NCBI RefSeq assembly: GCF_003918875.1
Contig: NW_025767085.1
Location: 682,001 to 746,000 of the forward strand
Length of the DNA stretch: 64,000 nucleotides
Direction of reading: 5' to 3'
Origin: Haliotis rubra
Taxonomy: Eukaryota
This document shows positions 20,689 through 45,629 of the stretch, in pieces. The notes below the pieces were generated by a model. That model was given only the letters and a program-made list of their open reading frames with translations, did not search any database and was not told where the DNA came from. A program made the translations under genes and the position numbers. Within the stretch, counting starts at the first letter, position 1. Each line of letters begins with the position of its first letter.

Positions 20689-20725
20689 ATGTCGTGGGCA
20701 CTGTTGTTGACGTTTGCTCTAACAG
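20689..20725 (+). CDS. Gene B exon 1 (signal peptide MSWALLLTFALT)
   Basis: ATG in ACGATG context, hydrophobic run, CAG|GTAAGT donor, phase 1. Confidence 0.82.
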
Positions 20726-20969
20726 GTAAGTGGATAGTTAGAGTGTATGCTGTTTAGATGTACTGTTACACGAAAATAAAAAATGCAGATATAAAGTAAA
20801 GTAAGCAATACCTGTTGCTGTTATTTTCCTTTAAGCGGATTGGGAAAATATATACTAGGATGTGTAAATAGTTTCTTTGTCGGGTATAAATAAGAAATAT
20901 TTCTGAATTATGTGTCAATATAAACTACACATGTTTGCGTGTTGGTTTGATTTGGTTATATGTTTTTGA

Positions 20970-21390
20970 TTAACGCAACAATCAGCAATATTCCAGTTAT
21001 GTGACCGTGGTCTGTAAACAATCAAGTCTGGACCAGGCACTCATTGATTGCCTTCATATTATTGTATACTCCCCAGGGAGTTGAGATTGATAATACGCTG
21101 TACCGATGAGATTGACATCCAATGAGCGAGGGAAAAATACTAGCGCCTTGAGCATGCACTAGTTGCCTGGATATGTGCGCTATATAAATAACCTATCATC
21201 ATCATCATATTTATCTATCTACGCAATTTGGGTACGCTGACATGCACCAACCGAGTTACCATGCATGGCCTGTACAACCCCAATATGTAAAATCAACACA
21301 ATATGTAAAAACTAACGCACATGGCCACCCGATCCCGTTACGACAAAAAGAGGTTACTGAAGATCAATTCTAAACAAGATGTTTACTGGT
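20970..21390 (-). mobile_element. Old SINE family A copy interrupted by an L2-tailed SINE fragment (about 21060-21208)
   Basis: GTCTGTAAACAATCAAGTCTGGACCAG ... CCACCCGATCCCGTTA; the insert ends GCGCCTTGAGC...GCGCTATATAAATAACC(ATC)n. Confidence 0.6.
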
Positions 21391-22926
21391 AATACTAGAT
21401 GTACACCCTGGGGATACGCCCCTCCTAAATACGCCCCTCCTAAATCCTTTGACTGAAATTTTCAAACAGCGAATAAGACGTTTACGATTTCAATCTCGTC
21501 AACCGTGCCAAGCTGCATCGGACACATGCATCTGCTCCCTTCACCTTGCACAACAATCTTAACGCATGTGTTATATTGAATGCCTGTGATATATTGAGGT
21601 GGTATATTCACTAGGTTCTGATGCACGCTGGGTCTTTAATTACAAACTTAAAAGACCCGATGAACATGTTGACAAACCTAGAAACGCCCTCAATTCCTCA
21701 ACACCCCCACCCCACACCACTCGACATCTCCAGCAGGGTGCGACCTGTTGTATACTATACATATTGTACAGAGGGCACTATAGGCCTACAAGGGACAATG
21801 TGAGCTGGGGATTCTACGTGAGGGGGACAATGGGGCCATACACACACCTAGAAAGCTTTCACGGGGTGAAGGATATATATTATGTTGATATATTTACATT
21901 GGAATGTTCATGGAAAGTGGGTTCTGTATACCAGCTAAGAACGGTGTTATGTTTTCAAAAACAGGTATAGACATAGGTACAGTCAGGAGACATTCACGTG
22001 CACATATATACTCCACCAGATACAAACATACATGTACGAATATTGACCTGTCATACAGTATATCTACTGTAATATGTTAAATAGGTCATTTGATATTGAC
22101 CGTATGATATATTTAATATGTCTACTGTATGATATCTTTAGCACGTACCAATACGCCTTACTAGAATTTCCTAGTTTTGCCTTAGGCGGTAAGTTTGTTT
22201 GTCGTTTAACCCCATACTCAACAATGTTCCAGCTATATGATAGTCTGTAAATAATAGTCCAGGAGCTTCGATTTATTTCTATTAATTTATCAACACGTAT
22301 CAAATAGATCTTATTTGTGGTCTTTAGAAAATCAACAACACAAGTGATGCTATTTTGATTTTATGCAGCGGTGAGAGAGAGAGAGCTGTTTATTTCAGTA
22401 AAGGGGCCACAGGCCCATTATACATGTTGTACCATCCGCACAGTTTATCAAGCGCCAATATAATAATTAACATAGATGCTACGGGGCAGGATACACATCA
22501 GGATATAGAGATATCGCAATCGCAAAAACGTATTACCTTTTTTAAGAGCTAGGTCTAAATATTTTCCCAGATCATTAATGACAATTATATTCCTTGACAA
22601 GAACAGTTGAAACAGCTACTCATGTGATCGGAGATTATAGTAATATTTGGGAATTGTATTTTCTCTAAAACCATTGTATTATGGACTTTATGCAGCGGTA
22701 GATGAAACATGTTTAGTCATGTTAAAAGTTAACGGTCGGTATGAGTACAGTTTGGAAGAGTAATCACCCACATCTACATGTATACGTAACGCGTCGACAA
22801 CTTGCTGATATATTTAACTATGGTGTATATCAATAGTATGGCTCAGACACAACAACATGACAGTTGCATGCAGTATGTTTAGATATATCACTTGGGTACA
22901 AAACAGTGTACAGTTCCTAAGTGAAA

Positions 22927-23130
22927 GGGGCGGACGGAGGGATAGCTTGGCGCCTAAAGCGTTAGCGCGTCAGGCCGACGACCCGGGTTCGATTCCCTGC
23001 TTTGATACAAATGTAAAGCCAAATTCTGGTGTCCCACCCCCGCCCCCACAAACACACACACACACCCACCCGCCTTGATGGTGCTGTAATATTGATAAAA
23101 GGGAAATAAAATCCTGTCCACTAACTCATA
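22927..23130 (+). mobile_element. SINE family B (tRNA-derived head), diverged
   Basis: GGGGCGG...TAGCTTGGCG...GACCCGGGTTCGATTCCC with A/B-box-like motifs. Confidence 0.7.
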
Positions 23131-23343
23131 TCAACGATACACTATAACGCTTAAAGACGCCAACAATATATATTTGCTCCTGTATCACCCAACCTTGAAG
23201 GTAGGGACATCGGAAACATCTGGGTGGTATTCTTTTCCCATGAGAAAACAAGGAAGGAATACTGTCACACAAATGCAACATGCAAGTGCATTGGTGCTAT
23301 TCATAAAGCGAAAAACAAAAAAAATAAACAAGGTCTCATGCTA

Positions 23344-23663
23344 ATTGTCATATACTCGCTAATCCCTTGTATAATGTTAAATTTGTATGTGTCCCATTGT
23401 CATATACTCGCTAATCCCTTGTATAATGTTAAATTTGTATGTGTCCCATTGTCATATACTCGCTAATCCCTTGTATAATGTTAAATTTGTATCTGTCCCA
23501 TTGTCATATACTCGCTAATCCCTTGTATAATGTTAAATTTGTATCTGTCCCATTGCCATATACTCGCTTATCCCTTGTATAATGTTAAATTTGTATCTGT
23601 CCCATTGTCATGTACTCGCTAATCCCTTGTATAATGTTAAATTTGTATCTGTCCCATTGCCAT
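23344..23663. repeat. 52-bp minisatellite (6 copies)
   Basis: ATTGTCATATACTCGCTAATCCCTTGTATAATGTTAAATTTGTATCTGTCCC tandem. Confidence 0.95.
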
Positions 23664-24057
23664 AAGAGCCTAAAGAAACATGCTCATTAAGTCGGACACT
23701 TCATTAAAGGTAAACAAAATTGTGTATATCTTTAAAAATAATTAATAAAAGTTTTAAAAAATATTTATGTCCATGAATACACGTAAAATACGTTAGTGAT
23801 CGGAATTTATTGTATCTGTATAAAACGCTGATTAACTATGAGCAAAATCTCCTCTCTTCATAATGAAGTCATTTTACTCTCGAATGCACAATAGTATTGT
23901 CTTGAGAAAATGTTACTTCTCGACAGTCAGCCTTATAGGCAGGTGAGTGTACATTACCTGTTATCTGTAACATAATGATCCATTTCAACCTGCCACATCA
24001 AGCGTAAACAAACAACAGGTGCTGCTATAGGCAACGTTCTCGTTAACTGTGATTCTT

Positions 24058-24482
24058 ATATACCGTCAGATAAATATGTCCAAATGTATACCGTCATACA
24101 AATATGTCCAAATGTATACCGTCATACAAATATGTCCAAATGTATACCGTCATACAAATATGTCCAAATGTATACCGTCATACAAATATGTCCAAATGTA
24201 TACCGTCATACAAATATGTCCAAATGTATACCGTCATACAAATATGTCCAAATGTATACATAATATGTCCAAATGTATACCGTCATACAAATATGTCCAA
24301 ATGTATACCGTCATACAAATATGTCCAAATGTATACCGTCATACAAATATGTCCAACCGTATACCGTCATACAAATATGTCCAAATGTATACCGTCATAC
24401 AAATATGTCCAAATGTATACCGTCATACAAATATGTCCAAATGTATAGCGTCATACAAGTATGTCCAAATGTATACTGTCAT
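24058..24482. repeat. 28-bp minisatellite (about 15 copies)
   Basis: AAATATGTCCAAATGTATACCGTCATAC tandem. Confidence 0.96.
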
Positions 24483-26024
24483 AATACAAACATGTAACCA
24501 CATATATAATTGTCACGATACAAATTCATGTATCTTCAAATATAGTCCCTTACGACACAGGCAAAGAAACATACCCCTACAATGCAAACATGCAAACATA
24601 TGTGACAATATGGTAATATATATGTACACATGGGCTACAAATTGTGTAGCTAGAAAACAAATATTATGAAAACTAACACGGCAAATGCTTGAAAGTTTCC
24701 ACCCCGAAACAGATTATATGCCCAATGCAACCATCGTACCTAACGTACCTTGACAGACAGCTAGACGACAATGTATGCAATGTGTTGTACCATATGTTGT
24801 CCTCAGTGTAAAACTCTTCTTAAATCTATATCATATACAAGGTAGTAGAACATTGTGATCATCCACGTCTTTGTGGTGTGTTTGACAGACATTGCCTACA
24901 GTCATAACAGATGAATACTTCACCCTGTTAGATATTTGGAAAACTAAGCTTAAGGCTATGTCGTGTTACAAACTTGCATAGCATCTGCCTTCTATCTAGG
25001 TCTGTTGTCACAATCAACATTCTCTTTAAGACGAGCAATATTCCAGAAGACCCAGCCTCTAGTTTATACATTTCACAATACATGTACTAGTTTGTGAGTA
25101 CGATAGAGCATTCTCTTTTCATACCGATTTCAAACATTCTCAAAAGCTTTGTCAGTAAAGGTTTGAAGAAGATCAATGGCATATATACAAAGGACATTTT
25201 CAAATTTATAAATTACTGACAAAAATGCAATTCCTATTTTCAATTGTGCCATATGTTCTCGTGTACGTTTACATGAACAATTCAATTTGCACGTATTTTT
25301 AACGGTGGCACCGACACACTACATACAATACATTCGGAATTGGAATGACTCAGGAGTCGACTTTCAGACGAGATTTCTGATGAATATTATGTATTGTTAG
25401 CTTGAAATCCATGTGAATCAAATGTAATATCCAAACCTGTAAACATTAGCTGTATACTACTCTTTTTCAACGTTAGTGTTTTTGTTTAGAGAAATATACT
25501 GAAATCTATGAACACTTATTTCCTTAGGGTTCAGCCGTCATCATAAAAAATGAAAGTCCAGTCTTCTTTATGAAACACTGACCTAATCATCCAAGTCAGC
25601 CATTGGGCGTCACGGCACGCCGCTAGCGTATTTGCCACCTAACGTTAATTCGCGGGGCATGTGATATAGCATTACGCTTGTCTAAACACTTTTCTCACTC
25701 AAAAGAAATCTGAAGCAATGTTTAAGCATAATCAATATTATTGGGTATGATAATAATTTCCTCTTATCCCATTTGAATATCTAATACGAAAACAGATGTT
25801 GATCGGTGTTCCATAATCTAATAGACATGTGTTTTCTGTGCGATGTAAAAGAACAGGGATTAAAAACAACAAAGGGATATAGCTGGTTAGAATAGGCCTT
25901 TTTGTTTCTTGTCGATTCTCTGTCGAGTTTTAACTGGGAATCTTCACGCAAGGGAATAAAGTGTGAAACCATCAAACAACACGGAAATGTGGCATACAAA
26001 CACGACTGTATTCTAAAGCTATTT

Positions 26025-26241
26025 CAGTGTATGAAATATGCCAAAAACCCAGCCAGACATCAGGGCTGGTAACTTCAAAATGTTACCAGCCAAAATGGAT
26101 TTAACAAGACCATACACCAAGATATGTATGGAACATCTAAACGTTTTACCAGACCATCGGGGTGGCTAGCTGTAAATCTAGACCGTCCGTCAGAAATCTA
26201 GCCCGTCTCGGGCGGTCGGACGGGCCTTATTTCATACACTG
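26025..26241. mobile_element. hAT-like MITE
   Basis: 14-bp TIR CAGTGTATGAAATA / TATTTCATACACTG flanked by direct repeat GCTATTT. Confidence 0.7.
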
Positions 26242-27572
26242 GCTATTTACATTTTTAAGTCACAAATAATTACAAAGGAATCAATATGACAATACAAGAG
26301 AGAGTGGCAGTACAAATTCAAGATCAGTGCAAATACACTGGTAATATGATATCAAAATAATAGCAATATAGTGGGTAAGGTTTTACGCCGCTTTTCGCAA
26401 CATTCAAGCAATAAATCGAACCCGTGTCTTGGGGGTGACAAGCGAATGCTTTAACCACAAGGATGCCTAAACTCCTCAATATTAATACAGACTATGATGA
26501 TGACATTAACCTCGATACAAGAGCAGTCAAGCTTCAAACATAGTCCTTTATAGGCTGGGTATCCTAGGTGTCAAATAAGCTTCCCTCAACTGCTGGTCTT
26601 AATGTAATGTGAGATGTGTTGATTGATGACAGAGACAGGCCATAACAACTTCCAGAAGTTTCCTTTCAGGAATATTCCGTGAAACGGTGGGTCAGACTAA
26701 GTAGGAATATTACAGATCCTCCGGAAATTCCCATAACTCCCAGTCTATACATGTACACTACTGTCAATGTAACAGTTACTTATTTACATGATCACTGTTA
26801 CACACTTAACGTCCCACAATCTGGTGTATATACTATTGAAAGAAGACCAACCCATCAACATGTACTGTATGGATTAATGAAGACAATTGAAGTCAAGAAA
26901 GCTAGGATAGCTTGGTCTGTCAACGCGTTTGCTGACGGGATTTAACTCTTTGAGGAAACAAGCACAAACTCGGCATCACTGTCCCGGAACACTTATTAAA
27001 CAAGATATAAACAATGAACAGCAAATAAGCGAAATATATATGTTCAGAAATTACAAGGGCAGCAGCGAGCTAAGGGTCCGGCTAAGACATAAAAAGGTCA
27101 GTCGTCTTCCAACTCAACCTCATTTCTTTCCTACTAAGGCTTTGGTAGAATTCATTCTTCTTGGGGCTTCAAAACTTCAGCAATCCTTTGGCAATGAAAG
27201 TTGGATCTTTACACTGATATATTGAAATATGAACACGAGGGCATGTACTAGTAAACTCAGTTCCAGCTAATGTCAATAGTGAGGGTCCAGCTCAGACATG
27301 AAAGAGGTGAGCCGAGTTACAACTTAACCTCAATGCCTTTCCTACTAGCAGCATATCCTCCTCTCGGTTGAACTTGTTTGTTTTAGGACAGATATTGACC
27401 GAATGAACCATTAATTCCGAACGCTAATTACTATGTTCATTTTAACAATAGCTATCTTGAATTAGTCGATGTTATATGACCATTAAGAAAGAGTAGGATT
27501 GAATTTTGCAAGCATTAACATAGACTTATCACTTTCAACTTACTTATCTCTTGACACATTGATCTCTGCGTG

Positions 27573-28954
27573 GGTCTACTCCCATTTGTGAGAACTCCCA
27601 ATTGTGAGACTCCCAGTTATGAGACAGTGGAGTAGGTAATTAACAAAGTAAACACACCATACTCCCCTGCCTGATAGAATAGATTAACCCTAGCTAATTA
27701 CTGATTTGCTATGAAATTGAATCTTTGGAGGTAACATAATGAAACTTTATAAGATAAATTGATTAACATACTCCGGTAAATGTACTTAAAAATTAAACAC
27801 TTTGTGTAAGTAACTTCATGATCATTTGAAAGAGAAATTAATTTACCTACTCAGATTTACTCCGTCTCCGAAACTACAAGCTATAGTTTAAGAAATAACT
27901 CTGAAATACAAGGAATTTACCGTCGAACTGCCTCTTATGCCAAATCCTTTTTACCCGACACAATAAATTTATGGAACGCCCTACCAAGAGTCATGTAGTC
28001 TCACAGAATTTAAAAACCTAATTACAAAAACCGAAAACAAGATTTATATTGACCTTAATTATGGATCTTGTTTTTGTCAAATCGTCCACTGCCGCCTCAG
28101 GCTCGGATGTAGCGACCTAAACGCCGATAAGTATAACAGACATTTAACAGACAGTCCATGTTGTTCTTGTCGATATCAGAGTGAAAACGCCCTACACTAT
28201 TTCCTCACTTGATAAGAATTAATATGTAGTTTACACTACTCGTTATAACCCGGATACCATTTTGAACGGAAACAAGAATTTACTTCTTGTGTAAACCAGC
28301 AGAAAATAGTTGAATTCGTCCACGATTACATCATCAAGACACAACGCTTAAATTTTCTCAGGAAAATACTTAAATTAACTCAACAACCTTCTCATGATTG
28401 ATGTATATTCCTACAATAGCTTGTTAGACACACACAACTGTAACTCTCTAATTATGACTACTTAGAGAATAGTTGTATTTGATGTAATCTGTATATATTT
28501 ATCTGTAGTTAAAATATATTTATGCAACAGTCAATATCGATGACGTCACATCCTCCATTTCATTTTGTATTTTATGTTGCATGGGAGCAGTGTTAACATA
28601 AGCAGTTATGCTTGTTCACCAATCCCAATTCATTTTCATAAATGATAATAAAATATGTTTAAACCAAAATGACTTTCAAATTTCATAATAGTCAATAAAA
28701 ATGTGTTATCATAATTAATTTACTATTCTCTGAATAAATAAAATATTTAATGAACTATTTCTTCTTTGTAAATAAAATCTTTGATAATCTATTTCATTAA
28801 TCAACTCATCAATGAACTATGGCTCCTGTGGGTACTCTTCAACAACTTGGCTGATCCCACTTTCATTGTAGGGATGTGGAAACACCACCTATGTGCACTG
28901 TACCATTAATTAATGTGTCTCACAACTGGGAGTTCTCACAAATGGGAGGACACC
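27573..28954 (+). mobile_element. Non-autonomous MULE-family element whose interior is occupied by a LINE 3' fragment
   Basis: TIRs GGTCTACTCCCATTTGTGAGAACTCCCA / TGGGAGTTCTCACAAATGGGAGGACACC; TSD TCTGCGTG; ends homologous to the element at 59515-60923. Confidence 0.88.
27861..28650 (+). mobile_element. LINE (CR1/L2-group) ORF2 C-terminus and 3' end
   Basis: SFLPDTINLWNALP, HCRLRLGCSDLN, SPCCSC...ENALHYFL; ends with AATAAAATATGTTTAAACC. Confidence 0.8.
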
Positions 28955-29144
28955 TCTGCGTGTATTGACTACACGTACATCAAATGTCAAATGTCCTGTC
29001 CCTAATAAATTTTGGCAGTGCTAAAAAGGCATTTACAAGCAGTCATAATTACAGTTTCAGAAATCACTCTTCCCTAATATTACATGTGCCTTCTTAATGG
29101 TTGCAATATAACCCAGTATGTTGTAGTTTATTTTGTTTTGATTT

Positions 29145-29372
29145 TAACGCCGAACTAAGCAAAATTCCAGCTACAGGGCGGCTGTCAGTAAATAATCGAG
29201 TCTGGACCAGACAATCCAGTGATCAACAGCATGAGAATCGACCATATTGGGAAACGATGACATGCGTCAGCCACGTTAGTGAGCCTGACCACCCGATCCC
29301 GTTAGTAGCCTCTAACCACAGGCAGGGTTACTGAAGACCAATTCTTACCCGAATCTTCGATGGATCTTCGGG
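29145..29372 (-). mobile_element. SINE family A
   Basis: AATAATCGAGTCTGGACCAGACAATCCAGTGATCAACAGCATGAG...CCACCCGATCCCGTTAGT. Confidence 0.85.
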
Positions 29373-29432
29373 TCTGGGGTATGTTGTAACTGTCTTTGAA
29401 TTCGGTGCGTTTTCAACGTAACGTTCATTATA

Positions 29433-30926
29433 TACTCTCCCAAAAAAGAAACGCATATAGGAATTTCAACTGTATTTTTATGTTTATTTTGAAACATCTT
29501 GCAGGCTTTAAGAGTCAATGAAATATAAAATATATGAAATTGCACACTGGGAATGTAGACTTATCCGTCTTCGGCACCAACTCGAGGAAAGTCAGTTTGA
29601 CTGTCACATGGAGACGTGTGGTGGCGCTGAAGTCAATACCTCGTGTGACCACCGTGGGCATCCAGAACTGCACGGCATCGCCTCGGCATCGAACGAATAA
29701 GTCTCAGAATCTCGTGTTGCCCAATCGCAGCCCACTCTGCCTGTAGTGCCTGTGCGAGTTGCTGAAGTGTCTGGGGCTGATGGTTACGGGGTCGCACCCG
29801 TCTGTCCAGGGCATCCCACAGATGTTGGATTGGGTTTAAGTCCGGTGATCTTGAGGGCCAGGGGAGCACATTGATGTTGTGGTTCTGGAGGAAGTCTCTA
29901 GTGTGACGTGCTGTGTGGGGCCTGGCATTGTCCTGTTGAAACAACTCCCTCTGGCGATCAGTGATCGTAGGATGGGCGTAGGATTTCGTCACAGTACCGT
30001 TGAGCTGTCAGGTTGCCCTGGATCATCACCAATCACTTCTCCTACGGCAGGTAATTTTCTCCCCAAATCATAACACTTCCTCGGCCGAATCTGTCCACCT
30101 GGGGAACGCAAGCGTCGGCGAAACGTTCATGTCGACGTCTGTACACCCGCATTCCTCCATCGCGTCGTTCCAATAGAAATCGTGATTCATCACTGAACCA
30201 GATTCTACGCCAATTCGGTCAGTTCCAGGCCTGAACGTTGGTGCACCATTGAACTCGATGTCGACGATGTTGTTGTCGAAGCACAGGGCCAAAATAAGGT
30301 CTTCTGGCACGTAAACCAGACTCTCTCAACCTGTTCCTGACGGTCTGTGCAGAAAGCCTCCACAATCCGGGTATTTGTCGAGCGGTACTGGTCGCCGTAG
30401 CTGTTCGATGACGCAGGTGATGTAGCGATCCTGCGCCGCAGTGGTCGCTCGGGGTCGCCCACTACGAGGGGCATCTGCATCTCCCAGAGCCGTGAAATGG
30501 TGCTTTGGTGAACATTCATGCGTCGGGCAACTGCACGTTGAGACTGGCCAGCTTCAAGCAAACCAATGGCGATATGACGGTTGGCTTCACTTAGACGTGG
30601 CATTTTGCGTTCGTCAACAATATTCCAAATACAGTGAATAATCGACAGATAGCGATCAACCTTTTATACCCATCACTGAGACTATCTGATTCCCAACTTT
30701 CACGTACATTGCATGTGAATTGTGTATTCTGTGACACTACACGCCGAAATTAAAAATCATGCTGTTAAATACGGGTATTCTACGGATGGTGCGTTTTGTT
30801 GTGATGTTTCAAAACATAAACATAGGACTCATAAACAGAGCAAAACCTTTTGTAAAATGAATCATGTTTTAATTCATTTGCTACATGAAATTGCTATTTT
30901 CATGATGCGTTTCTTTTGGGAGAGTA
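29433..30926 (-). mobile_element. Tc1/mariner element with TIRs; frameshifted and deleted transposase (29633-30603)
   Basis: TIR TACTCTCCCAAAA(AA)GAAACGCAT with TA flanks; MPRLSEANRHIAIG, FQQDNARPH, WPSRSPDLNPIQHLW, GGHTRY. Confidence 0.95.
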
Positions 30927-34282: not shown

Positions 34283-34385
34283 GTCTTATTTTCGGGGATA
34301 ACTGCGTCGAAGATTCAGTCTGTTTGGACAGTCTGTATTTGGCTGTTATCAATCTACAGTCAGGAGACTTCAGTGGCTATTGTCG
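34283..34385 (+). CDS. Gene B exon 2 (signal peptide end and first half of domain 1)
   Basis: ttacag| ... |gtaagt; GLIFGDNCVEDSVC...SGYC; phase 1 to 2. Confidence 0.87.
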
Positions 34386-35400
34386 GTAAGTCACAGACAT
34401 AGTAAGTCAGGTCTACTACTGTCTGTAGCCAGCAGACTGTGGTGGTCACAGTCGGTAAGTCACAGATCAAGAACCGGCTGCCAGGAGTCAACAGACTGCA
34501 GCAGTGTTAAACTAGTAAGTTACAGACATAGACCCTGCTATCTGTAGTCAGCAGACTATGGAGGTCACAGTCGGTAAGTCACGGACCTAGACCCAACTGT
34601 CTATAGTTAACAGACGTCTATGGTGTAACAGACTATGGTGGTGTAAATCGGTAAGTCACAGACCTAGACCTCAACTGTCTATAGTTGTTAACAGACTATG
34701 GTGGTGTAAATCGGTAAGTCAGACAGACCTAGAGTCAACTGTCTATAGTTAACAGACGATGGTGGTGTAAATCGGTAAGTCACAGACCTAGACCTAACTG
34801 TCTATAGTTGTTAACAGACTATGGTGGTGTAAATCGGTAAGTCACAGACCTAGAGCCAACTGTCTATAGTTAACAGACTATGGTGGTGTAAATCGATAAG
34901 TCACAGACTTAGACCCAACTGTCTATAGTAAACAGACGGTGGTGTAAATCGGTAAGTCACAGACCTAGACCTAACTGTCTATAGTTGTTAACAGACTATG
35001 GTGGTGTAAATCGGTAAGTCACAGACCTAGAGCCAACTGTCTATAGTTGGTAACAGACTATGGTGGTGTAAATCGATAAGTCACAGACTTAGCGTCAACT
35101 GTCTATAGTTAACAGACGATGGTGTAAATCGGTAAGTCACAGACCTAGAGCCAACTGTCTATAGTTGGTAACAGACTATGGTGGTGTAAATCGGTAAGTC
35201 ACAGACTTAGAGCCAACTGTCTACAGTTAACAGACTGTGGTGGTGTAAATCGGTAAGTCACAGACCTAGACCCAACAATCCTGTCAGATGTCCGAATGTG
35301 AAAATGTTGTTTGTGACGTAGCCCAAACTGTCTACATGTATAAGATCTCAGTGAACACTGTCGGTAGGTCAGCTGTCTACAGTCAGAAGACTACAGCGGA
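34380..35400. repeat. About 58-62-bp minisatellite derived from the exon 2 end and donor site of gene B
   Basis: Unit CGGTAAGTCACAGACCTAGACCCAACTGTCTATAGTTAACAGACTATGGTGGTGTAAAT, about 16 copies. Confidence 0.93.
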
Positions 35401-35608: not shown

Positions 35609-35721
35609 CAACTCAGAGTCGTATGTAGCGTGTTCGGAAACATCCCTTGTTGGTTGTAACAGAAAAACCTCGAACTTAGTCAAGCACACCCGAAACACAC
35701 AAGCCGTTTACTGCGCAAGTG
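35609..35721 (+). CDS. Gene B exon 3 (second half of domain 1)
   Basis: ctttcctttcag| ... |gtacgt; RNSESYVACSETSLVGC...VYCAS; phase 2 to 1. Confidence 0.87.
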
Positions 35722-36772: not shown

Positions 36773-36860
36773 GAAGCAACCCTGGCTACCTGGAGTGCCA
36801 GACACGCCGCAGTGTGTGCGAGGCAATATACGACCAGTTCCAGTCCCTGTCACTGTGCAG
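36773..36860 (+). CDS. Gene B exon 4 (first half of domain 2)
   Basis: tcttccag| ... |gtactg; GSNPGYLECQTRRSVC...SLC; phase 1 to 2. Confidence 0.87.
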
Positions 36861-37295: not shown

Positions 37296-37411
37296 TGATC
37301 TGGATCGATATGTTGTGTGTGTTCTACGTGACCTGTCATCATGTCACCAATCAACCTTCAACACCACGTCTATGACTCAAGCATTGAAGGAGAGTGCTAC
37401 TTTGTCCTGTG
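37296..37411 (+). CDS. Gene B exon 5 (second half of domain 2)
   Basis: gtcacag| ... |gtaaga; SDLDRYVVCVLRDLSSC...LSC; phase 2 to 1. Confidence 0.87.
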
Positions 37412-38017
37412 GTAAGAGATATGCAAACTGCCATTGATTAAAGATGTGATGGGTAAATTTCTATTTTTCCCAGAGAGCCATGTGGGACATTTTTGAAGAC
37501 AAACACGTGAAAGGAACATTTTTTCAGAATGTTAAGGTTGGGTTACATTTGGGCCCGGGTTATATTTCAGTTACGGTGAGGTTTAGGGTGACTGAGTCTA
37601 GTTTTACGCCGCTGATATTCAGCTATATCACCGCGGGGTAGGGATTAAGGGTAATGCTAAGTTAGCAGACTGACACTTGTCCGAATTACAAGATACATGT
37701 ATATGATTACATATCTCGGTTTAAGTATCAATGCATAACGACATATAAAACATCTTTGACGTAATGTGCTATTCTGCTTAATAGATGTGTCCTTTACATA
37801 TTTTAGTCGAATACTGATAATAATTAATATTTTCTTATATTTTCACTTAACTTTATGTCAAACAATCAGCAAACGTTCTTAACAGTTTAAGGAAAGATAA
37901 AGAACTGGTTCGACCAAGTGTTGAAGTGATAAAACGGAATCTTCATCTTGTTTACACACTTACTCAGAATCCGTTAAACGTATAAAGCCGGGAAGCGTAA
38001 TGGGTAGTCTAGTAATG

Positions 38018-38188
38018 GAGTGAGTGAGCGAGTTTAGTTTTACACCGCTTTTAGCAATATTCCAGCAATATAATTGCGGAGGCCACCACAAATCGGGCTT
38101 CACACATAAGTCCTATGTGGGGAATCGAACTCGGGTCTTCGGCGTGACGAGCGAACGCTTTAACCACTGCACTAGGCTACCCAACCAC
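38018..38188 (-). mobile_element. SINE family B
   Basis: GGGGAATCGAACTCGGGTCTTCGGCGTGACGAGCGAACGCTTTAACCAC. Confidence 0.9.
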
Positions 38189-38269
38189 CTGAACACCATG
38201 TTGATGTAGTGATATCTTAAAGGTGACGTGCACATTGCTCCTCCCTAGATGTGATTATTTCCCCTATAG

Positions 38270-38372
38270 GTGCTGGGAACGCATCGTGCGCTGTGCAGTA
38301 CATCATGTGCCAGACTACGTCACTCCTGGTCACCCAGAGTCTGGAGGTCAACAATTTGGATGGCTTCTGCAG
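38270..38372 (+). CDS. Gene B exon 6 (first half of domain 3)
   Basis: ttcccctatag| ... |gtgtgt; GAGNASCAVQYIMC...DGFC; same length (103 nt) as exon 2. Confidence 0.86.
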
Positions 38373-39254
38373 GTGTGTCTGAACGTTAGGCACCAAACAG
38401 GAACTTACTTTATTACGAAAATTATGTCAGTTCCGGATGGAACCGGTAAGCAGGACAGGTATATCTTTTTTGCAAATACCCGGTGCCATCCCTGATATTA
38501 AGTGTTCTATTAAAATTTCGTCTCTATTTTCTATGATGCTCAATGCTTTCTCAAAACACGGAACAGTGCATTAGGAAATTCATGTACATGAATGTTCATT
38601 CGTGCCAACACAGTAACTTCTGATATGGAAATTCAGAGTAACTTTAAATTAAATCGTAAATTCCAAAAACACTTGTGTACAAGTGAAGAGATTCGGCAGC
38701 ACATTATTACATACACAAATTTTAGAATTCCTTTTGAATCATCCGAACGAAAGTGACGCTCACACGAGGTGAGGTTAAGTGTAAGTAGTATCATACAACA
38801 TAACAGAAGAAACCCGATCATATTTCGAATGACGCGTCCTTTTGAAGGCATCCGTCTGTTACTTTCAACAATAGTGTAAACGAGCTATGTGTCAACTTGG
38901 GCGTGAATGAATGGGCCTGAATTGACGTTTTTGTTAATGTCCTACACATGTCATTCAACCAGTACGTTCTCGGTGAGGATTTGCTATGTAGCTTTGATTT
39001 CTAACTGTTACATATGCCTGAAAGAGGTATGTGTTACGTGAAGGCACTTCTTCATTAAGTTCATGACTAAAGTTCGTTCTGCAAAAAAGAAATCTGCACC
39101 TTTCTATTTAGGTTGATACTTTTGCAGCCAACACCTCATGGTATATTCTTTTTAAAACAGCTACATTTAAGTTCACTTTGCTGAAGCTATTACCTATGCA
39201 GCTTGTATGGTCCTATTGTGAGCCATGCTTAAAACTTTAGTGTGTGTGTGAGAG

Positions 39255-39418
39255 AGTGATTGTGTTTAGTTTTACGCTGCTTTTAGCAATATTCCAGCAA
39301 TATCCCTGCGGGGGACACCAAAAATGGGCTTCACACATTGTACCCATATGGGAAATCAAACCTGGGCCTTCGGTGTGACGAGCGAACGCCTTAACCACTA
39401 GGCTACCCCAACTCCCCT
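39255..39418 (-). mobile_element. SINE family B
   Basis: Same consensus as 38018. Confidence 0.9.
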
Positions 39419-39496
39419 GCTTAGTGTAACCTTAAGGAAAGATATAGTACTACTCAAGTCTAACATACATAATGTCTTCCACGCACATCTCCACAG

Positions 39497-39630
39497 CCAT
39501 GTTGATACCTTCCTGGCGTGTAGGAGGAGTCTGCATGATGGCTGTGACAACATCTATACCACACCAACAGCATTGTTACTGTCGGAGGAGATGGTAACGA
39601 AGGATAAAGCTTTGTACTGTAGACCAAATG
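39497..39630 (+). CDS. Gene B exon 7 (second half of domain 3)
   Basis: tctccacag| ... |gtaaga; SHVDTFLACRRSLHDGC...LYCRPN; phase 2 to 1. Confidence 0.86.
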
Positions 39631-39929: not shown

Positions 39930-40035
39930 GATCAAGTCCAAGCTATTTTTCATGTTTACAAAAACAGAAGTCTTGCGAATCACGACTTTATATAACGGGG
40001 GACATAGACAACACGGTGGTCCTGTATTACTGCAG
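39930..40035 (+). CDS. Gene B exon 8 (first half of domain 4)
   Basis: tcattag| ... |gtgagt; GSSPSYFSCLQKQKSC...YYC; paralogous to exon 4. Confidence 0.86.
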
Positions 40036-40904
40036 GTGAGTATACATATGTCCTGTCTCTATACAAGCTTTCATGACGTTAAAACAGCATGATTTTAGTA
40101 GCGTAACAATATATAGCTACCACACCCAGTAGAGGTCGACTGTTATTATTTTTAAATGATCTTGTTGGAAAAGCGATCGTGTTGACCTCCTGTCAGTTTA
40201 AGTCATAGCATGCATGGCTAGCTTCTTGCGTATTATGTGCAGGAGATCTTAACTTCAATGCAAAGCTAGGTTACCTGGAGAGGTGATGTTGGGCGTTCGG
40301 TTCTATGATCAATTTAGCCCTGGGACACTGCCGTTAACCTACTTCTACAATGAAAACAATCTCTTGTCACTCATTGCACAATGACAAAAATAAAATAGGA
40401 ATATGCTGGCGCTGAGTCAAATGTTTGGAGAAGGTTGTTGATAATAATTTAAACAAATACTGTTTTTAGTCTTCAAATAAAGTATGTCGCTGTATAAATC
40501 ATTGTGACGTTACATCAACATAGCTTACTCAGTTATATTGGCATTTAGAGTAGGGCATAGCAGAACTTATTAAACGCAACCACGAAGTTGTCACGCTTGA
40601 AAAGACGAAGTAAGACTTCAAATGTACTTTAAATCGGGACCAATATATGTCAGAGATAGATGCTGAAATTTAGTTTCTGCAGTCCCTAAAACATTGTCTA
40701 TGGTTATTTCTACAGCCTTTGTGGACAATCATTTCACGCTTTGGATTTTATAATTCTATACGGTGAATTCTGACTGATGAAAAGTACTATTCTTGGGTAT
40801 ATAGCTTGCGCGATGAATTGGCATTAGAGCTGCATATTGTGATTTGAAACCATTGTTGACCAATTAGAATTTTAGCATCCCCATTTGTCTTGTTTGAAAA
40901 TATT

Positions 40905-42620
40905 TCAGCAGCTCACAATAGCATTAAGTGAATATAAACGTTATCAACTTACAATGTCAATACTTGAATATGCAAGGTATCAGCTCACAACATCATTAAC
41001 AGAATATTAACATCATCAATTTACAATATCAGCACGTGGATATATCAAGGTACAATAGCATTAACTAAATATAAACGTCATCAACGGACAATATCAATAC
41101 TGGAATATATACTCAGCAGCAAAACAACGTCAGTACGAATTCAAAATTAGATAGGCACTGTAATCAAATCATTACAGAAATTGACATAATAAGCGGATCA
41201 AAACCATTTTTTGTGTACAGTATCTTGACACATCAATGGATAACTCAGCACAATTTCAAGACATTACATGAACGTTTGCAGTCCATTCAGACCCTTGACT
41301 TCAGTATCTAGTGTGACCACCACGAGCGGCAATAACTGCAGCACAGCGTCTATGCTAGAGTGCACCAATCGATTGATGAAGGCCATTGGCACCTGGAACC
41401 ACACTCTGAGAAAGGCCTGGCGCAATAAATCGCCTGTGTTCGGCATTGGTATGACATTATTCAGTCTTCTCTGAATTTCATCCCAAAGATATTCAATTGG
41501 GTTTAAATCAGGACTAAGGGCTGGCCACTGCATAATGTTGACACCGTTCTGCTGTAGAACGTCCTGTGTAGCTCTGGCAGTATGGGCCCGGGCGTTATCA
41601 TGCTGGAAAATGTTGTTCCGGTGACGTGCGAAATGTGGTATGACGTGGGGTCTGGAGAGCTTGGTCGATGTAGTGCACCGCTGTGATGCCGGCTCCTCTC
41701 CCTGGACCAAGGTTCTGGAACACCACAGGACCCACTCTCTGGTTCAGGCCTATTCCACCCCATACCATGATGCTTGCACCTCCTCATGAGTCTCTTTCCA
41801 TAACACATTGGTCTGAGTAACGCTGGCCACGTCGTCGCCATATTCTTGTTCTGCCATCTGCAGTTGATACGCAGTACCGACTCTCATCTGTGAACAGAAC
41901 AGTTCTCCATTGCCTGTATTGCCAGTTTTGGTGTTGTAGGGCAACTGTAGACGTTCACGCCGATGACGAGGGGTGAGGATAGGTTCACGGTGGTTCCCGC
42001 TGTTAAGACGTCGGCGTACTGTATCAGTACTGATTGGTCTTCCGTGTGTTCCCACTGTCTGGCGTGCTGTTTCGGATGCCTGCATGAAGGGATTCTGTAC
42101 ATGCTGTCGCACAACATGGCGGTCTTGTCGTCTTGTGGTCACCCTTGGTCTGCCAGTACAGGGGCGATCATTTGTGGTGTTGGTGGTCTTCCTAGCGCCT
42201 GGTTCCTCTGAACTGTCGTGAGTCGCGGCATCATGCTGACGTTGTAATGTGAATGCTTCAACTAGGTTTGGGGGTGCATTTAAAACAGCTGGTCCTTGTG
42301 AACAGCACGTGCAGCATGAGTTGCATGAAAAACATAGAGAACACCGTACCATCTCCGAGATCAGGTTGCGTTTTTGAGACCATTTCCTGCGTTCCACTCT
42401 GAGTTTGGGAAGGAATGTCTTTTCTCAGGTAAAGTTTGAGATGTTGTCAAAAATATACAACCAGAACGTTAAATGAGTTTACACTTATCCGTTTCTGCGA
42501 AGGAAAATTCCTAACTGACGTTTCTTTTGCTGCTAAGTATATAAAGGTATCAGCTCACAACAGGATTAACTGAATATAAACACTATCAGCTTACTACTTC
42601 CTCAATTGAATATAAAGAGT
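40905..42620. repeat. Degenerate minisatellite (about 70 bp) split by the Tc1 insertion
   Basis: CAGCTCACAA...ATTAA...AATATAAAC..ATCA units at 40908-41108 resume at 42540-42620. Confidence 0.7.
41110..42539 (-). mobile_element. Tc1/mariner element with TIRs in intron 8 of gene B
   Basis: TIR TACTCAGCAGCAAAA.AACGTCAGT / ACTGACGTTTCTTTTGCTGCTAAGTA; DRPCTGRPRVTT, FQHDNARAH, WPALSPDLNPIEYLW. Confidence 0.93.
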
Positions 42621-42832
42621 ATAAGTAATTATAGGACTGTTTGTTGTTAATTTCTGTCAAACCGGAATACATGTCTGCAACACCTTACCCTGTAGATGTC
42701 AGGCTGCACTTTATTTAGAGCGGTGATGGCGTATTTAAGCATACAAAGCACTTGTCGTCACATCTAATGTCTGGATTCGAAGTTTGAGTTTGTCGACAGC
42801 ATGGAGGATTATTAGTGTTGGATTTTATTCAG

Positions 42833-42960
42833 GTCACTAGTCGAATACAGGACGTGTCTGTCACGTGACCTGGCACCCTGTCAGCAGGATGCCATCAATC
42901 TACCGGCACTATTGGCCTCGACCACGACCAACTTCACACGGACTTGTTCTGGCATCAATA
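42833..42960 (+). CDS. Gene B exon 9 (second half of domain 4)
   Basis: tttattcag| ... |gtgagg; RSLVEYRTCLSRDLAPCQQ...RTCSGIN; paralogous to exon 5. Confidence 0.86.
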
Positions 42961-43499
42961 GTGAGGCGCATTTTCATTTATCTGATTATAACAAGCATGA
43001 GATGTCATGAGTTTTGTGTTTGTTGTGGGTCTGTGTTTGTTGGTGAGGTAGTGAGGTGTGTTTAGGGACAAGTATTATGTGTAGTAGTTAGGTTTTTGTT
43101 TAGTGGTGAAGTGGGAAGGTTTGTGTGTGGTAGTGAGGTGAAGAAGTTTGTCTTTGGTTGTGACGCATATATTTGGATGATGAGATTACTTCTTTGTGGT
43201 GAGATTTTTGTTTGGGGGTGAGACTGAGAGGGTTTTGCTTGGTTGACAAATGTGTGTTTTGCTGTGAGGCATTTGGAATGTTCAGGTGTGTTATTTGGTT
43301 GTGACGTGGTGAGGTTTGTATCAAACTGCTCCGCAGTGTCTCACGGGCATACTAGAACATGTGATCATGAGTTTGTATGCCTCAATTATGTTTCTGTATC
43401 AGTATCAACCCCAGATCATGGGTTTCGCGATGTGAAACACATCTGAAAACTGCATCTCTTAGGAGATAGAGGGGCGCTATATTGCAAGTTTTCGTTGTT

Positions 43500-44150
43500 G
43501 CTAAAACATTGTTCAAGAAGTGTCAGGTCCAGCGTTGTTATTCAAGAATGTCGGGCGACGACAAGAGGATGGTTATCAAAATGTGGCACGACTGCTGCAT
43601 CCATAACTTCCTGTCGATAACGTTGACCATTTAGTGTCTCGGATCCTGTAATGCAGGCAGTCGAAAGGCATCCGCACACCGTAAGTGAGCCACCACCAAA
43701 GGGTTCAGCTGCATGAGTCACCTCCTGATGAGTGACAAATAAGCGACTAAGACCGCCGGTAACGCGTAGAAGGTAGCGACTTTCATCAGACCAATGAACA
43801 TTAGTTCAAGTGTTGTTCTCAAGTTGCGGTTTTCTTGGAGCGTTCTGTCTGTGCCTAGCTGTGAAGAACAGATGTCTGTTCGGACGACGAGTCCTCAAGC
43901 CAGCAGCCCGCTTCCTGAATCAGATGGTACTGTTGGAAAGTCTCTCCGACTCTCAATCCTCGGCGCAGTTCTGCAGAAGTCATTGTATTGCGTCTTGTCA
44001 GACCAATTAGGACTCTGTCATCACAGTTATTGGTCTTCCATGCTCTTCCGTGCCTTGGGCGATCCTTTATTACATCGGCATTGTGTAGAAAACTGTGCTG
44101 CACATATTGCAAGTATAAAATTTATGCCTCAATGTGCACGGCGCACATGA
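43500..44150 (-). mobile_element. Degraded Tc1/mariner transposase fragment
   Basis: KDRPRHGRAWKT...DRVLIGLTRRNTMTSAELRR; GGGSLTV and SPDI motifs downstream. Confidence 0.7.
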
Positions 44151-45103
44151 ACCCATAGGAAAGAAAGTTTTTTATGGATGTCAACTTCTTTATCATGAGT
44201 AACACAACGTTTCGGAGTACATTTTACCCCTCCATCAGAACCAATAGCTTTTGAGATATTGTGTTATATACAATATATATAACGCGTGCTTTACATGCAT
44301 TTCAGTATGCTTGGGTAGCATTGCCTGTTCAGACCAAAAGTTTGAATATTGTCCAATGATTCAGATGGTGTTTAATCAATGCCCATCTGTATAGACTGAG
44401 ATACTAAGCGGTAGTGCTTGTCGTAAAGGGTATCTATCTGGGTTAGTGGTCAGGCTCGGTAGCCAGGGTCATAGCTTGCCCATCGGCGTGGGACGTACAT
44501 ATCAATGTGAAGGTGATCGCGACATATTGAGCTTGTTTGCAGATATTGGTATCGTTTGAATGCGGGAATGTGTCCTTCGCACATGTCCCATACATAACAC
44601 GCTGACGGAGGTATTACCTTTCAACCATGCGCGACAGCCGACGTGTGAAAATCGCAATTCAATATACTGAAAAAAACATGAAATAGACGGAACACTAACC
44701 AGTGAGATGTGATACAAGCGAATGAATATTCATTATCATTAACGTACATATTAAAATAGGGTACATGATTGCCTGCACAATTAAAGTATTGACGCTTGTC
44801 GATGACGAATGTTGTATGTGTTATAGCCTTCAGCAATCCGATTGCTTAATGGTGCATGTCTTTGTCGTCTACTGCTAGCATGTTGATGACATCCTGTAGA
44901 TACGTATGTGTCATCTATCATCATCATCATCATCGTCATCTACTTTCTTGTGAATTTTACATATCATCATTACAAATAACACGACATTTTATGGGAATCA
45001 TTTGTGATTTACGCCTTATCCCAAAAGAGCGTTAGTTACTAGATTCCCAATAAGAGACATACAACTCTATAACTATATTCATCTAGTTTTATCTATGTTT
45101 CAG

Positions 45104-45130
45104 TTTATGCTGGAGTCCGGGAAATGTGCT
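45104..45130 (+). CDS. Gene B exon 10 (27-nt microexon IYAGVREMC)
   Basis: tatgtttcag| ... |gtaagt; symmetric phase 1-1. Confidence 0.65.
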
Positions 45131-45570
45131 GTAAGTAATACAATTACATAAACGTAACTTATTATGTCTGTGTAATGAATCCATATATTAACCTGAAGTC
45201 AGAAAATCAGGATAAACGATGCATTATTGTACACATATCTCACCACTAAAAGACAATCCATATGCTACGTATAAAGGAATAAAATAATATATCAAGATGT
45301 AAATCCACTTTAAGTGCTGATGTAAATAAGATATTTTATTTACTCTTTATTGCTCACCCAAGAAGCAATCAACCGTCAAGATAACACCTTTATTACACTA
45401 TGTACAATAACATCACGTGCGAAACAGGACTATATTGGTCAATGGCCTTGTTAGTACCACTGCGCAACCGTTAGATATTTGTTGAAATAAATCCGTAATT
45501 TAAACGTCATCTAATGGGGACCCTTTGAGAAACATATAGATATATACGTTATAAACTTCCCTTTTTGCAG

Positions 45571-45629
45571 GTTCACCGATTATGCTGCTGTTGACGTTGG
45601 CTGTTGTATTGGTATACGTCGCTTCCTGA
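45571..45629 (+). CDS. Gene B exon 11 (hydrophobic C-terminal GPI-signal-like tail and stop)
   Basis: cttccctttttgcag|; CSPIMLLLTLAVVLVYVAS-TGA. Confidence 0.82.

What the first reader, a model, noticed from the sequence alone, without database searches (positions are those of the whole stretch)
20689..45629. Hidden 11-exon gene encoding a GPI-anchored protein with four tandem neuritin/RGM-N-like six-cysteine domains
Seen in sequence: 11 exons splice with canonical sites and exact phase compatibility into a 337-aa ORF that the ORF track does not show. It has an N-terminal signal peptide, a hydrophobic C-terminal tail and N-glycosylation sequons (NTT, NAS, NFT). Its four domains have Cys spacings x5-x19-x8-x7-x18, x6-x12-x8-x7-x21, x6-x19-x8-x7-x24 and x6-x18-x8-x7-x21, with an aromatic residue three positions before the fourth Cys. 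Established knowledge: C-x8-C-x7-C in a disulfide-stapled helical bundle on a GPI-anchored protein is the pattern of vertebrate neuritin (CPG15) and of the BMP-binding N-terminal domain of repulsive guidance molecules, each of which has only one such domain. Inference: this is a tetravalent invertebrate member of that fold family, possibly a cell-surface ligand, co-receptor or BMP-type decoy; I do not recognise it as a named gene.
Basis: partly seen in the sequence, partly recalled or inferred. Interest (0 to 1): 0.85.

Follow-up and report, generated by a model that had tools for sequence, protein, structure and literature searches.

The report
Abalone four-domain RGM-N-like surface protein
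This is a real 11-exon abalone gene, already in RefSeq as an unnamed protein, for a secreted and probably lipid-anchored protein made of four small disulfide-stapled helical domains that faintly but reproducibly resemble the growth-factor-binding head of repulsive guidance molecules; its function is unknown.

Summary
I rebuilt the 11 exons on the + strand. All introns are GT-AG and the phases match. The 337-aa product is letter for letter RefSeq XP_046580127.1, "uncharacterized protein LOC124287668" of Haliotis rubra. So the gene is unnamed, not hidden.

H. rufescens keeps the same 11 exons, including the 27-nt exon 10. Its DNA similarity to the window falls on exons or repeats, and dN/dS is 0.40. 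No RNA run could be found.

An AlphaFold model of domain 3 (pLDDT 83.5) is a three-helix bundle, a generic fold.

No Pfam family matches significantly. RGM is nevertheless the only family hit in the PDB by the domain profile. The abalone's own RGM has the same six-Cys frame. The hhalign score against an RGM_N profile (25.0) exceeds all 640 shuffles, including those that keep the Cys spacing. Remote kinship to RGM_N is plausible (about 0.5) but unproven. Neuritin was not testable.

The RGM C-terminal domain is absent and RGM's conserved helix-3 motif is missing. The BMP-decoy idea is therefore unsupported.

Relatives were found only in Haliotis.

The parts
20689..20725 (+). Exon 1. Start codon plus the first 12 codons of the signal peptide. 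Donor GTAAGT, phase 1.
   Evidence: This is the first in-frame ATG after the stop at 20542-20544, with A at -3. It lies in a block conserved with H. rufescens.
34283..34385 (+). Exon 2. End of the signal peptide plus domain 1 Cys1-Cys3.
   Evidence: H. rufescens has the same 103-nt exon.
35609..35721 (+). Exon 3. Domain 1 Cys4-Cys6.
   Evidence: H. rufescens has the same 113-nt exon.
36773..36860 (+). Exon 4. Domain 2 Cys1-Cys3. Donor GTACTG, the weakest donor of the ten.
   Evidence: The H. rufescens exon is 97 nt.
37296..37411 (+). Exon 5. Domain 2 Cys4-Cys6, with the conserved NTT sequon.
   Evidence: The H. rufescens exon is 122 nt.
38270..38372 (+). Exon 6. Domain 3 Cys1-Cys3, with the NAS sequon.
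   Evidence: H. rufescens has the same 103-nt exon.
39497..39630 (+). Exon 7. Domain 3 Cys4-Cys6.
   Evidence: Used as query it retrieved P0001 at 100% identity. It is single-copy in the genome.
39930..40035 (+). Exon 8. Domain 4 Cys1-Cys3.
   Evidence: H. rufescens has the same 106-nt exon.
42833..42960 (+). Exon 9. Domain 4 Cys4-Cys6, with the NFT sequon. Domain 4 is the most constrained domain (dN/dS 0.185).
   Evidence: H. rufescens has the same 128-nt exon.
45104..45130 (+). Exon 10. A 27-nt microexon, phase 1-1, encoding the linker and the likely GPI attachment region. Donor GTAAGT.
   Evidence: It has clean, consensus-like splice sites (polypyrimidine tract and CAG acceptor, GTAAGT donor) and the 27-nt length needed for 337 aa. 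It is required to match P0001 exactly. A 27-nt exon is also needed in H. rufescens, inside a conserved block.
45571..45629 (+). Exon 11. C-terminal hydrophobic tail and TGA stop (45627-45629).
   Evidence: Hydropathy.
34419..35276 (+). Minisatellite in intron 2. About 14 units of 59-62 bp, each holding a copy of the exon-2 donor sequence (TCGGTAAGTCACAGAC).
   Evidence: The array is also present, and longer, in H. rufescens.
29633..30603 (-). Degraded Tc1/mariner-type transposase remnant in intron 1.
   Evidence: Pfam DDE_3 1.1e-10 and HTH_38 7e-9.
41264..42397 (-). Degraded Tc1/mariner-type transposase remnant in intron 8.
   Evidence: Pfam DDE_3 9.8e-12 and HTH_Tnp_Tc3_2 1.3e-4.

Best explanation
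LOC124287668 of the blacklip abalone is a genuine single-copy protein-coding gene of 11 exons. Shown: the product starts with a hydrophobic signal-type segment. It has four tandem domains of about 70-80 residues, each encoded by an exon pair with identical intron phases and each holding six invariant Cys. It has three N-glycosylation sequons kept in three abalone species. It ends in a 13-16 residue hydrophobic tail with no cytoplasmic residues. Inferred: each domain folds as an up-down-up three-helix bundle stapled by three disulfides. From helix register the likely pairs are C1-C5, C2-C4 and C3-C6. The tail is exchanged for a GPI anchor near residues 309-313. That would remove the extra one or two Cys of exons 10-11 and leave 24 paired Cys. 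The mature protein would be an acidic, glycosylated string of four helical beads on the outer cell surface. The domain is most likely a distant relative of the N-terminal domain of repulsive guidance molecules (and perhaps of neuritin), multiplied by exon-pair duplication. It probably works as an extracellular protein-binding module, as a ligand or co-receptor. Its partner is unknown and is probably not a BMP.
For: Gene: the exact model was rebuilt from the sequence and equals XP_046580127.1. H. rufescens has the same 11 exons, with lengths 37,103,113,97,122,103,134,106,128,27,59. DNA conservation between the two species falls on exons or repeats. dN/dS is 0.40 with dS 0.46, and 0.185 in domain 4. 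All 24 domain Cys are invariant in the residues present in three species; H. asinina isoform X2 lacks the first two Cys of domain 4.
Fold: the AF2 model of domain 3 has pLDDT 83.5, pTM 0.72 and helices 4-26, 30-50 and 65-75. The low-confidence whole-protein model also shows three helices in each of domains 1-3.
RGM_N link: the domain profile searched against 177,635 PDB sequences returns only RGMB/RGMC N-domains (E 3.1-4.4). Pfam RGM_N is one of only three families hit by single domains (best E 0.043). The abalone RGM frame is C-x4-C-x22-C-x8-C-x7-C-x21-C with Tyr at -3 of Cys4. hhalign against a trimmed RGM_N profile gives P=1.6e-4 (probability 50%), and the global alignment puts all six Cys in register. 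The observed score of 25.0 compares with 9.0+/-1.9 for full column shuffles (0 of 200). It compares with 9.5+/-2.0 with Cys columns fixed (0 of 200). It compares with 10.7+/-2.9 with Cys spacing kept exactly (0 of 240). RGMB_ND is described as three helices with three disulfides (PMC7354924).
Membrane attachment: only the two terminal segments are hydrophobic, and the tail ends the protein.
Against: No transcript evidence could be obtained. No Logan or ENA transcript-derived sequence clusters with the protein. No match to any family is statistically significant in a database-wide sense. hhalign probabilities are only 15-50%, and the local match covers only Cys3-Cys5. Fold searches give a generic three-helix bundle: MIT domains reach Z 9.1, RGMB reaches TM 0.53-0.58 at Foldseek rank 11, and RGM is absent from the 50 rows VIA-align listed (lowest listed Z 6.0). 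The RGM N-domain lies in one exon in abalone, whereas every domain here is split after Cys3. The omega site in H. rubra is ambiguous: it reads Y-A-G where the other two species have N-A/V-G. No GPI or signal-peptide predictor was available. The disulfide pairing could not be read from the model.
Confidence: 0.5

Rival explanations
1. The gene and the protein architecture are as described. However, the six-Cys helical domain is a lineage-specific invention of abalones or vetigastropods that only converges on the RGM_N/neuritin Cys frame. On this reading it is a fast-evolving surface or secreted protein, for example in reproduction, immunity or shell formation, with no relation to RGM biology.
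For: Relatives were found only in Haliotis, at 70-72% identity. There is no paralog in the genome. The rate is fairly high, with dN 0.18 and dN/dS 0.40. No Pfam hit passes a threshold. The fold is generic. The intron that splits every domain is absent from the abalone RGM N-domain.
Against: RGM is the only family returned from the PDB. The profile-profile score exceeds all shuffles even when the Cys spacing is kept, so non-Cys positions also match, for example C-S-x-L-x-x-Y-x-x-C.
Confidence: 0.38
2. The protein is not GPI-anchored. It is either a type I membrane protein held by its C-terminal helix, or it is mainly secreted, for example through retention of intron 9, which would end the ORF 16 codons after exon 9.
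For: The omega site in H. rubra is not canonical. The open frame continues 16 codons past the exon 9 donor to a stop. No predictor was run.
Against: The hydrophobic tail is only 13-16 residues, it ends the protein without any cytoplasmic or basic residues, and it is kept in three species. The Cys of exons 10-11 number two, two and one in the three species. The mature Cys count is even in all of them only if that stretch is removed.
Confidence: 0.2
3. It is a tetravalent BMP/GDF-binding decoy or co-receptor.
For: RGM_ND is the BMP/GDF-binding part of RGM (PMC7354924), and it is the closest detectable relative.
Against: After Cys5, RGMs keep G-x-[IL]-x-[YF]-H. This stretch includes RGMB Arg100 and Leu103, which lie at the core of the GDF5 interface. 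The four domains have NRKT, HQST, DNIY and QQDA there, and domain 2 has a conserved N-glycan sequon in that stretch. The abalone has its own complete RGM.
Confidence: 0.07
4. It is a gene-prediction artefact or a pseudogene.
For: No RNA evidence was available here.
Against: The 11-exon structure, the open frame and all Cys are conserved in H. rufescens, dN/dS is well below 1, and conservation falls on exons.
Confidence: 0.03

Closest known systems
N-terminal domain of repulsive guidance molecules (RGM_N, PF06535; RGMB_ND in PDB 4UHZ, 4UI0 and 6Z3M)
   Same: Both have six Cys in the same order, with Cys3-x8-Cys4-x7-Cys5 and an aromatic residue at -3 of Cys4. Cys5-Cys6 spacing is about 21. Both are three helices with three disulfides. 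Both sit on a protein with a signal peptide and a GPI-type tail. RGM is the only family returned by the PDB profile search.
   Different: RGM has one such domain followed by the RGM_C domain with the GDPH autocleavage site. Here there are four in tandem and no RGM_C. RGM's conserved helix-3 motif is absent. Cys1-Cys2 spacing is x5-6 against x4, and Cys2-Cys3 is x12-19 against x22. Each domain here is split by a phase-2 intron, whereas the abalone RGM_N lies in one exon.
Neuritin / CPG15 (NRN1, PF15056)
   Same: It is a small GPI-anchored protein (PMC10123642). From my own recall of the sequence it has six Cys with C-x8-C-x7-C and Phe at -3; the residue numbering agrees with the peptides quoted in that paper. 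It is a weak language-model look-alike (0.78, rank 16).
   Different: It has a single domain. The Pfam NRN1 model does not hit any of the domains at E<=10. Its Cys1-Cys2 and Cys2-Cys3 spacings are longer (my recall). Kinship was not testable here.
DUF19 / T20D4.11-like domain of nematodes (PF01579)
   Same: It is a Cys-rich extracellular domain that occurs in tandem copies. It is the best named language-model look-alike of domain 4 alone (0.76).
   Different: There is no HMM hit. The score is in the range that shuffled proteins reach. From my own knowledge DUF19 has 12 Cys per unit.
MIT-type three-helix bundles (for example 2W2U and 2V6Y)
   Same: They are the best structural matches of the domain-3 model (Z 9.1, rmsd 2.6-3.0 over 72-74 residues).
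   Different: They are cytosolic, have no disulfides and share 4-5% identity. The match reflects a common helix arrangement only.

Membership tests
RGM family (repulsive guidance molecules) | RGM_N domain (PF06535) above the Pfam gathering score | tested here: not met
   The best single-domain hit is E 0.043, below the 24.2-bit cut-off, and two of 11 domains hit. By contrast the abalone's true RGM scores 67.9 bits.
RGM family (repulsive guidance molecules) | RGM_C domain with the GDPH autocleavage motif | tested here: not met
   There is no PF06534 hit and no GDPH in P0001. Both are present in the abalone RGM locus L003 and in its relatives.
RGM_N-like domain superfamily (remote) | Six-Cys frame with Cys3-x8-Cys4-x7-Cys5 and an aromatic residue at -3 of Cys4 | tested here: met
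   All four domains in three species and the abalone RGM. The global hhalign alignment puts all six Cys in register.
RGM_N-like domain superfamily (remote) | Statistically supported profile-profile similarity | tested here: inconclusive
   hhalign gives P 1.6e-4 to 1.7e-3 and probability 15-50%. The score exceeds 0 of 640 shuffles. The PDB search returns only RGM, but at E about 3.
RGM_N-like domain superfamily (remote) | Three-helix bundle with three disulfides of RGM_ND topology | tested here: inconclusive
   Three helices are predicted. For RGMB, TM is 0.53/0.58 and rmsd 3.5 over 66 columns at Foldseek rank 11. Generic bundles score higher. The disulfide pairing could not be read from the tool output.
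RGM_N-like domain superfamily (remote) | Conserved helix-3 signature after Cys5 (G-x-[IL]-x-[YF]-H; RGMB Arg100 and Leu103) | tested here: not met
   The motif is conserved in 20 invertebrate RGMs and absent from all four domains. The role of these residues in GDF5 binding is described in PMC7354924.
Neuritin (NRN1, PF15056) | Match to the NRN1 profile | tested here: not met
   There is no hit at E<=10 for the whole protein or for any domain. The only signal is an ESM feature score of 0.78.
GPI-anchored proteins | N-terminal signal peptide, a C-terminal hydrophobic segment without a cytoplasmic tail, and a small-residue omega site 8-12 residues upstream | tested here: inconclusive
   The hydrophobic ends are shown. 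N-A/V-G is a good omega triplet in two species, but H. rubra has Y-A-G. No NetGPI, PredGPI or SignalP was available.
DUF19 (PF01579) | Match to the DUF19 profile | tested here: not met
   There is no hit. The only signal is an ESM feature score of 0.76 for domain 4.

The most novel reading that the evidence does not exclude
The domain is a true, very divergent member of an unrecognised superfamily that joins RGM_N, neuritin and perhaps DUF19. On this reading the abalone protein is the first example in which the module is multiplied into a tetravalent GPI-anchored receptor or ligand trap for a secreted cystine-knot or other growth factor. That would give molluscs a cell-surface regulator of morphogen signalling with no counterpart in model animals.
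Probability: 0.08. Interest if true: 0.7.

Novelty: new variant of a known kind. Interest (0 to 1): 0.4.

Why it matters
If the link to RGM_N holds, the three-helix, three-disulfide module would not be confined to RGM. Until now it is known only as the single BMP/GDF-binding head of RGM, and perhaps as neuritin. The module could then be duplicated into multi-domain surface proteins. That would widen the family and offer a natural set of four divergent copies in which to ask what the fold binds. For abalone biology it gives a first structural description to an unnamed, genus-restricted surface glycoprotein. There is no functional or expression evidence, the similarity is below standard significance, and the gene was already predicted by NCBI. 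The practical weight is therefore modest.

Tried and rejected
1. RNA evidence. The look-up of sequencing runs returned only two runs of one sample. Read laying showed that they are genomic contigs of a close relative that run through introns, so they say nothing about splicing.
2. Exon-level Pfam scans found nothing.
3. The exhaustive search with exon 7 found P0001 and six long repetitive proteins. These six have no C-x8-C-x7-C motif and no real match to the domain profile, so I treat them as spurious.
4. Word-based homology searches with the protein and with the three-species profile found only Haliotis orthologs.
5. The whole-protein AF2 model was poor (pLDDT 51.5), and its Foldseek hits were TPR and 14-3-3 repeats, which are meaningless here.
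6. The ESM Atlas shape search of the domain gave bacterial TPR and DUF proteins.
7. The OS-D/chemosensory-protein hit for domain 4 (E 0.023, 15 bits against a cut-off of 25) is rejected as chance, given that 16 sequences were scanned.
8. The NRN1 profile searched against the abalone genome gave only sub-threshold hits, five of them at near-identical profile positions and three of those visibly copies of one short ORF.
9. The look-up of encoding contigs found no record for P0001 or P0008.
10. A literature search for the locus names found nothing.
11. I did not run complex prediction with a BMP.

Full report
**Observation**

The window comes from the blacklip abalone, Haliotis rubra. The ATG at 20689 is followed after 37 nt by GTAAGT. 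The stretch ending at 45629 is a hydrophobic reading frame that ends in TGA and follows a polypyrimidine tract and CAG.

Searching the + strand frames for partial Cys patterns located eight exon cores. Reading their borders gave AG..GT sites with compatible phases. Nine exons give a clean 309-codon frame. A 27-nt microexon at 45104-45130 has consensus-like splice sites and supplies the remaining codons needed before the last exon to reach 337 aa.

| Domain | Spacing Cys1 to Cys6 |
|---|---|
| 1 | x5-19-8-7-18 |
| 2 | x6-12-8-7-21 |
| 3 | x6-19-8-7-24 |
| 4 | x6-18-8-7-21 |

The aromatic residue three positions before Cys4 and the NTT, NAS and NFT sequons are also as stated. There is one more sequon, NGS at 231. 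Each domain is one exon pair that enters in phase 1, is split in phase 2 directly after Cys3, and leaves in phase 1.

**The gene is known to annotation**

I searched 1.84 billion representative proteins with the 44 residues of exon 7. This returned a 337-aa protein at 100% identity. Its sequence equals my spliced model letter for letter. It is XP_046580127.1, "uncharacterized protein LOC124287668 [Haliotis rubra]". The gene is therefore unnamed, not hidden.

**Is it a real gene?**

No RNA run holds the stretch. The two runs found are genomic contigs of a close relative that run straight through introns. Transcript evidence is therefore missing. The comparative evidence is strong:

- Orthologs exist in H. 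asinina (72% identity) and H. rufescens (70%).
- On the H. rufescens locus L027 exactly one exon chain reproduces the protein. It has the same 11 exons, with lengths 37,103,113,97,122,103,134,106,128,27,59. Only exons 4 and 5 differ in length, and the 27-nt exon is kept.
- DNA similarity between the two species falls on exons and their immediate surroundings or on repeats.
- dN/dS is 0.40 overall (dS 0.46, dN 0.18). It is lowest in domain 4, at 0.185.
- All 24 domain Cys are invariant in the residues present; H. asinina isoform X2 lacks the first two Cys of domain 4.
- The gene is single-copy, and the domain profile finds no paralog in the 1.38-Gb genome.

**Protein features**

Only residues 3-15 and 317-337 are hydrophobic. 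The ATG is the first in frame after a stop and has A at -3.

The C-terminal hydrophobic stretch is 13-16 residues long. It ends the protein and is kept in three species. This is the usual form of a GPI signal rather than a transmembrane helix. The triplet N-A/V-G, eight to ten residues upstream, is a good attachment site in two species, but H. rubra has Y-A-G there, so the exact site is uncertain.

The one or two Cys encoded by exons 10-11 vary in number between species. They would be removed with the GPI signal, leaving 24 Cys. This is inference: no signal-peptide or GPI predictor was available.

**Fold**

With only three orthologs the whole-protein model is poor (pLDDT 51.5). It is all-helical, with three helices in each of domains 1-3.

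I used the 11 domain sequences of the three species as an alignment (A4). With it, domain 3 folds with pLDDT 83.5 and pTM 0.72 into helices 4-26, 30-50 and 65-75. The helix register puts Cys2 opposite Cys4 and Cys1 opposite Cys5, which leaves Cys3 and Cys6 to pair. This too is inference.

Fold searches are non-specific:

- Foldseek finds nothing at E<=0.001. RGMB (6z3m_O) is at rank 11 with TM 0.53/0.58 and rmsd 3.5 over 66 columns. RGMC is at rank 45.
- VIA-align puts cytosolic MIT domains first (Z 9.1), and RGM is not among the 50 rows it listed (lowest listed Z 6.0).
- The Atlas shape search gives bacterial helical repeats.

**Family**

Pfam gives nothing significant for the protein or its domains. 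RGM_N appears for two of 11 domains (best E 0.043), next to OS-D and PIN_2.

A profile of the 11 domains, searched against all PDB sequences, returns three sequences at E<=10. All three are N-terminal domains of RGMB or RGMC (E 3.1-4.4), aligned from Cys2 to Cys5.

The abalone has a true RGM in one exon (RGM_N 67.9 bits, with GDPH). Its frame is C-x4-C-x22-C-x8-C-x7-C-x21-C, with Tyr at -3 of Cys4.

The hhalign results against RGM are:

| Comparison | P | Probability |
|---|---|---|
| Domain profile vs the abalone RGM sequence | 7.9e-4 | 25% |
| Domain profile vs a 20-sequence RGM alignment | 1.7e-3 | 15% |
| Domain profile vs the same alignment trimmed to RGM_N | 1.6e-4 | 50% |

In the last comparison the global alignment places all six Cys in register.

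As a control I shuffled the columns of the domain alignment. The observed score is 25.0.

| Shuffle | Null score (mean, sd) | Maximum | Shuffles reaching 25.0 |
|---|---|---|---|
| All columns | 9.0 +/- 1.9 | 16.1 | 0 of 200 |
| Cys columns fixed | 9.5 +/- 2.0 | 18.3 | 0 of 200 |
| Within inter-Cys segments (spacing kept) | 10.7 +/- 2.9 | 23.2 | 0 of 240 |

The similarity therefore involves non-Cys positions as well, such as C-S-x-L-x-x-Y-x-x-C. I rate remote homology to RGM_N at about one half.

Neuritin could not be tested directly. Its Pfam model gives no hit, and the only signal is a language-model look-alike at 0.78. DUF19 appears only at 0.76 for domain 4. Both scores are in the range that shuffled proteins can reach.

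**Function**

The protein is not an RGM, because the RGM_C domain and the GDPH site are absent.

RGMB_ND is a three-helix, three-disulfide bundle. Its helix 3 forms the core of the GDF5 interface through Arg100 and Leu103, directly after Cys5 (PMC7354924). Invertebrate RGMs keep G-x-[IL]-x-[YF]-H at that place. The four abalone domains have unrelated residues there, and domain 2 has a conserved glycosylation sequon in that stretch.

The BMP-decoy idea is therefore unsupported. The most likely role is an extracellular binding module displayed four times on the cell surface. The partner is unknown. The moderate rate of evolution and the restriction to one genus fit a lineage-specific interaction.

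**Verdict**

The finding is a new multi-domain variant of an RGM_N-like module in an already predicted but uncharacterised gene, and it is of moderate interest.

Noticed in passing
window 34419-35276 (intron 2): A minisatellite of about 14 units of 59-62 bp starts just after exon 2. Each unit repeats the exon-2 donor sequence (TCGGTAAGTCACAGAC), which gives a row of decoy 5' splice sites. The array is also present, and about 2.2 kb long, at the same place in H. rufescens (L027 about 27235-29447).
   Followed up: partly
G000:C2577:335949-336155 (-), locus L003:1237-1764:-: This is the abalone's genuine RGM ortholog. The RGM_N domain (67.9 bits) and the start of RGM_C with the GDPH autocleavage motif lie together in one 176-codon open frame.
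   Followed up: partly
L007-L010 and L014 (G000 contigs C2839, C2167, C2095, C2376, C450): Five loci give sub-threshold matches to the first half of the neuritin profile (E 0.07-8) at near-identical profile positions. Three of them (L007, L008, L014) visibly share one short ORF (C-x8-C then QIDLSDN...). This looks like a dispersed repeat that carries a neuritin-like fragment.
   Followed up: no
L005 (G000:C635:817490-817594 +): One open frame holds C-x8-C-x7-C-x21-C with Phe at -3 of the second Cys. It gives a weak RGM_N hit (18.3 bits). It may be another gene with the same Cys frame.
   Followed up: no
window 37943-38336 and 39125-39518: Two copies of a very high-copy short interspersed repeat lie in introns 5 and 6. 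Summed contig depth is in the millions in the DNA runs, and there are many chimeric joints between the two copies.
   Followed up: no
window 29633-30603 (-) and 41264-42397 (-): Degraded Tc1/mariner-type transposase genes (DDE_3 and HTH domains) lie inside introns 1 and 8.
   Followed up: yes
window 24049-24669 (intron 1): A tandem repeat gives a long artefactual 206-codon ORF with a repeating MSKCIPSYKYVQMYTVIQICPNVYRHTN unit. Related arrays occur in intron 1 of H. rufescens.
   Followed up: no
L027:1-22304 (-): In H. rufescens a 433-aa gene without Pfam hits is annotated on the opposite strand. It overlaps the promoter and first intron of the ortholog. I did not find its counterpart in the window.
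   Followed up: no
P0008 (H. asinina isoform X2): The annotated isoform has a 30-residue N-terminal extension and lacks 23 residues of domain 4, including Cys1 and Cys2. This could be an alternative acceptor or a model error.
   Followed up: no
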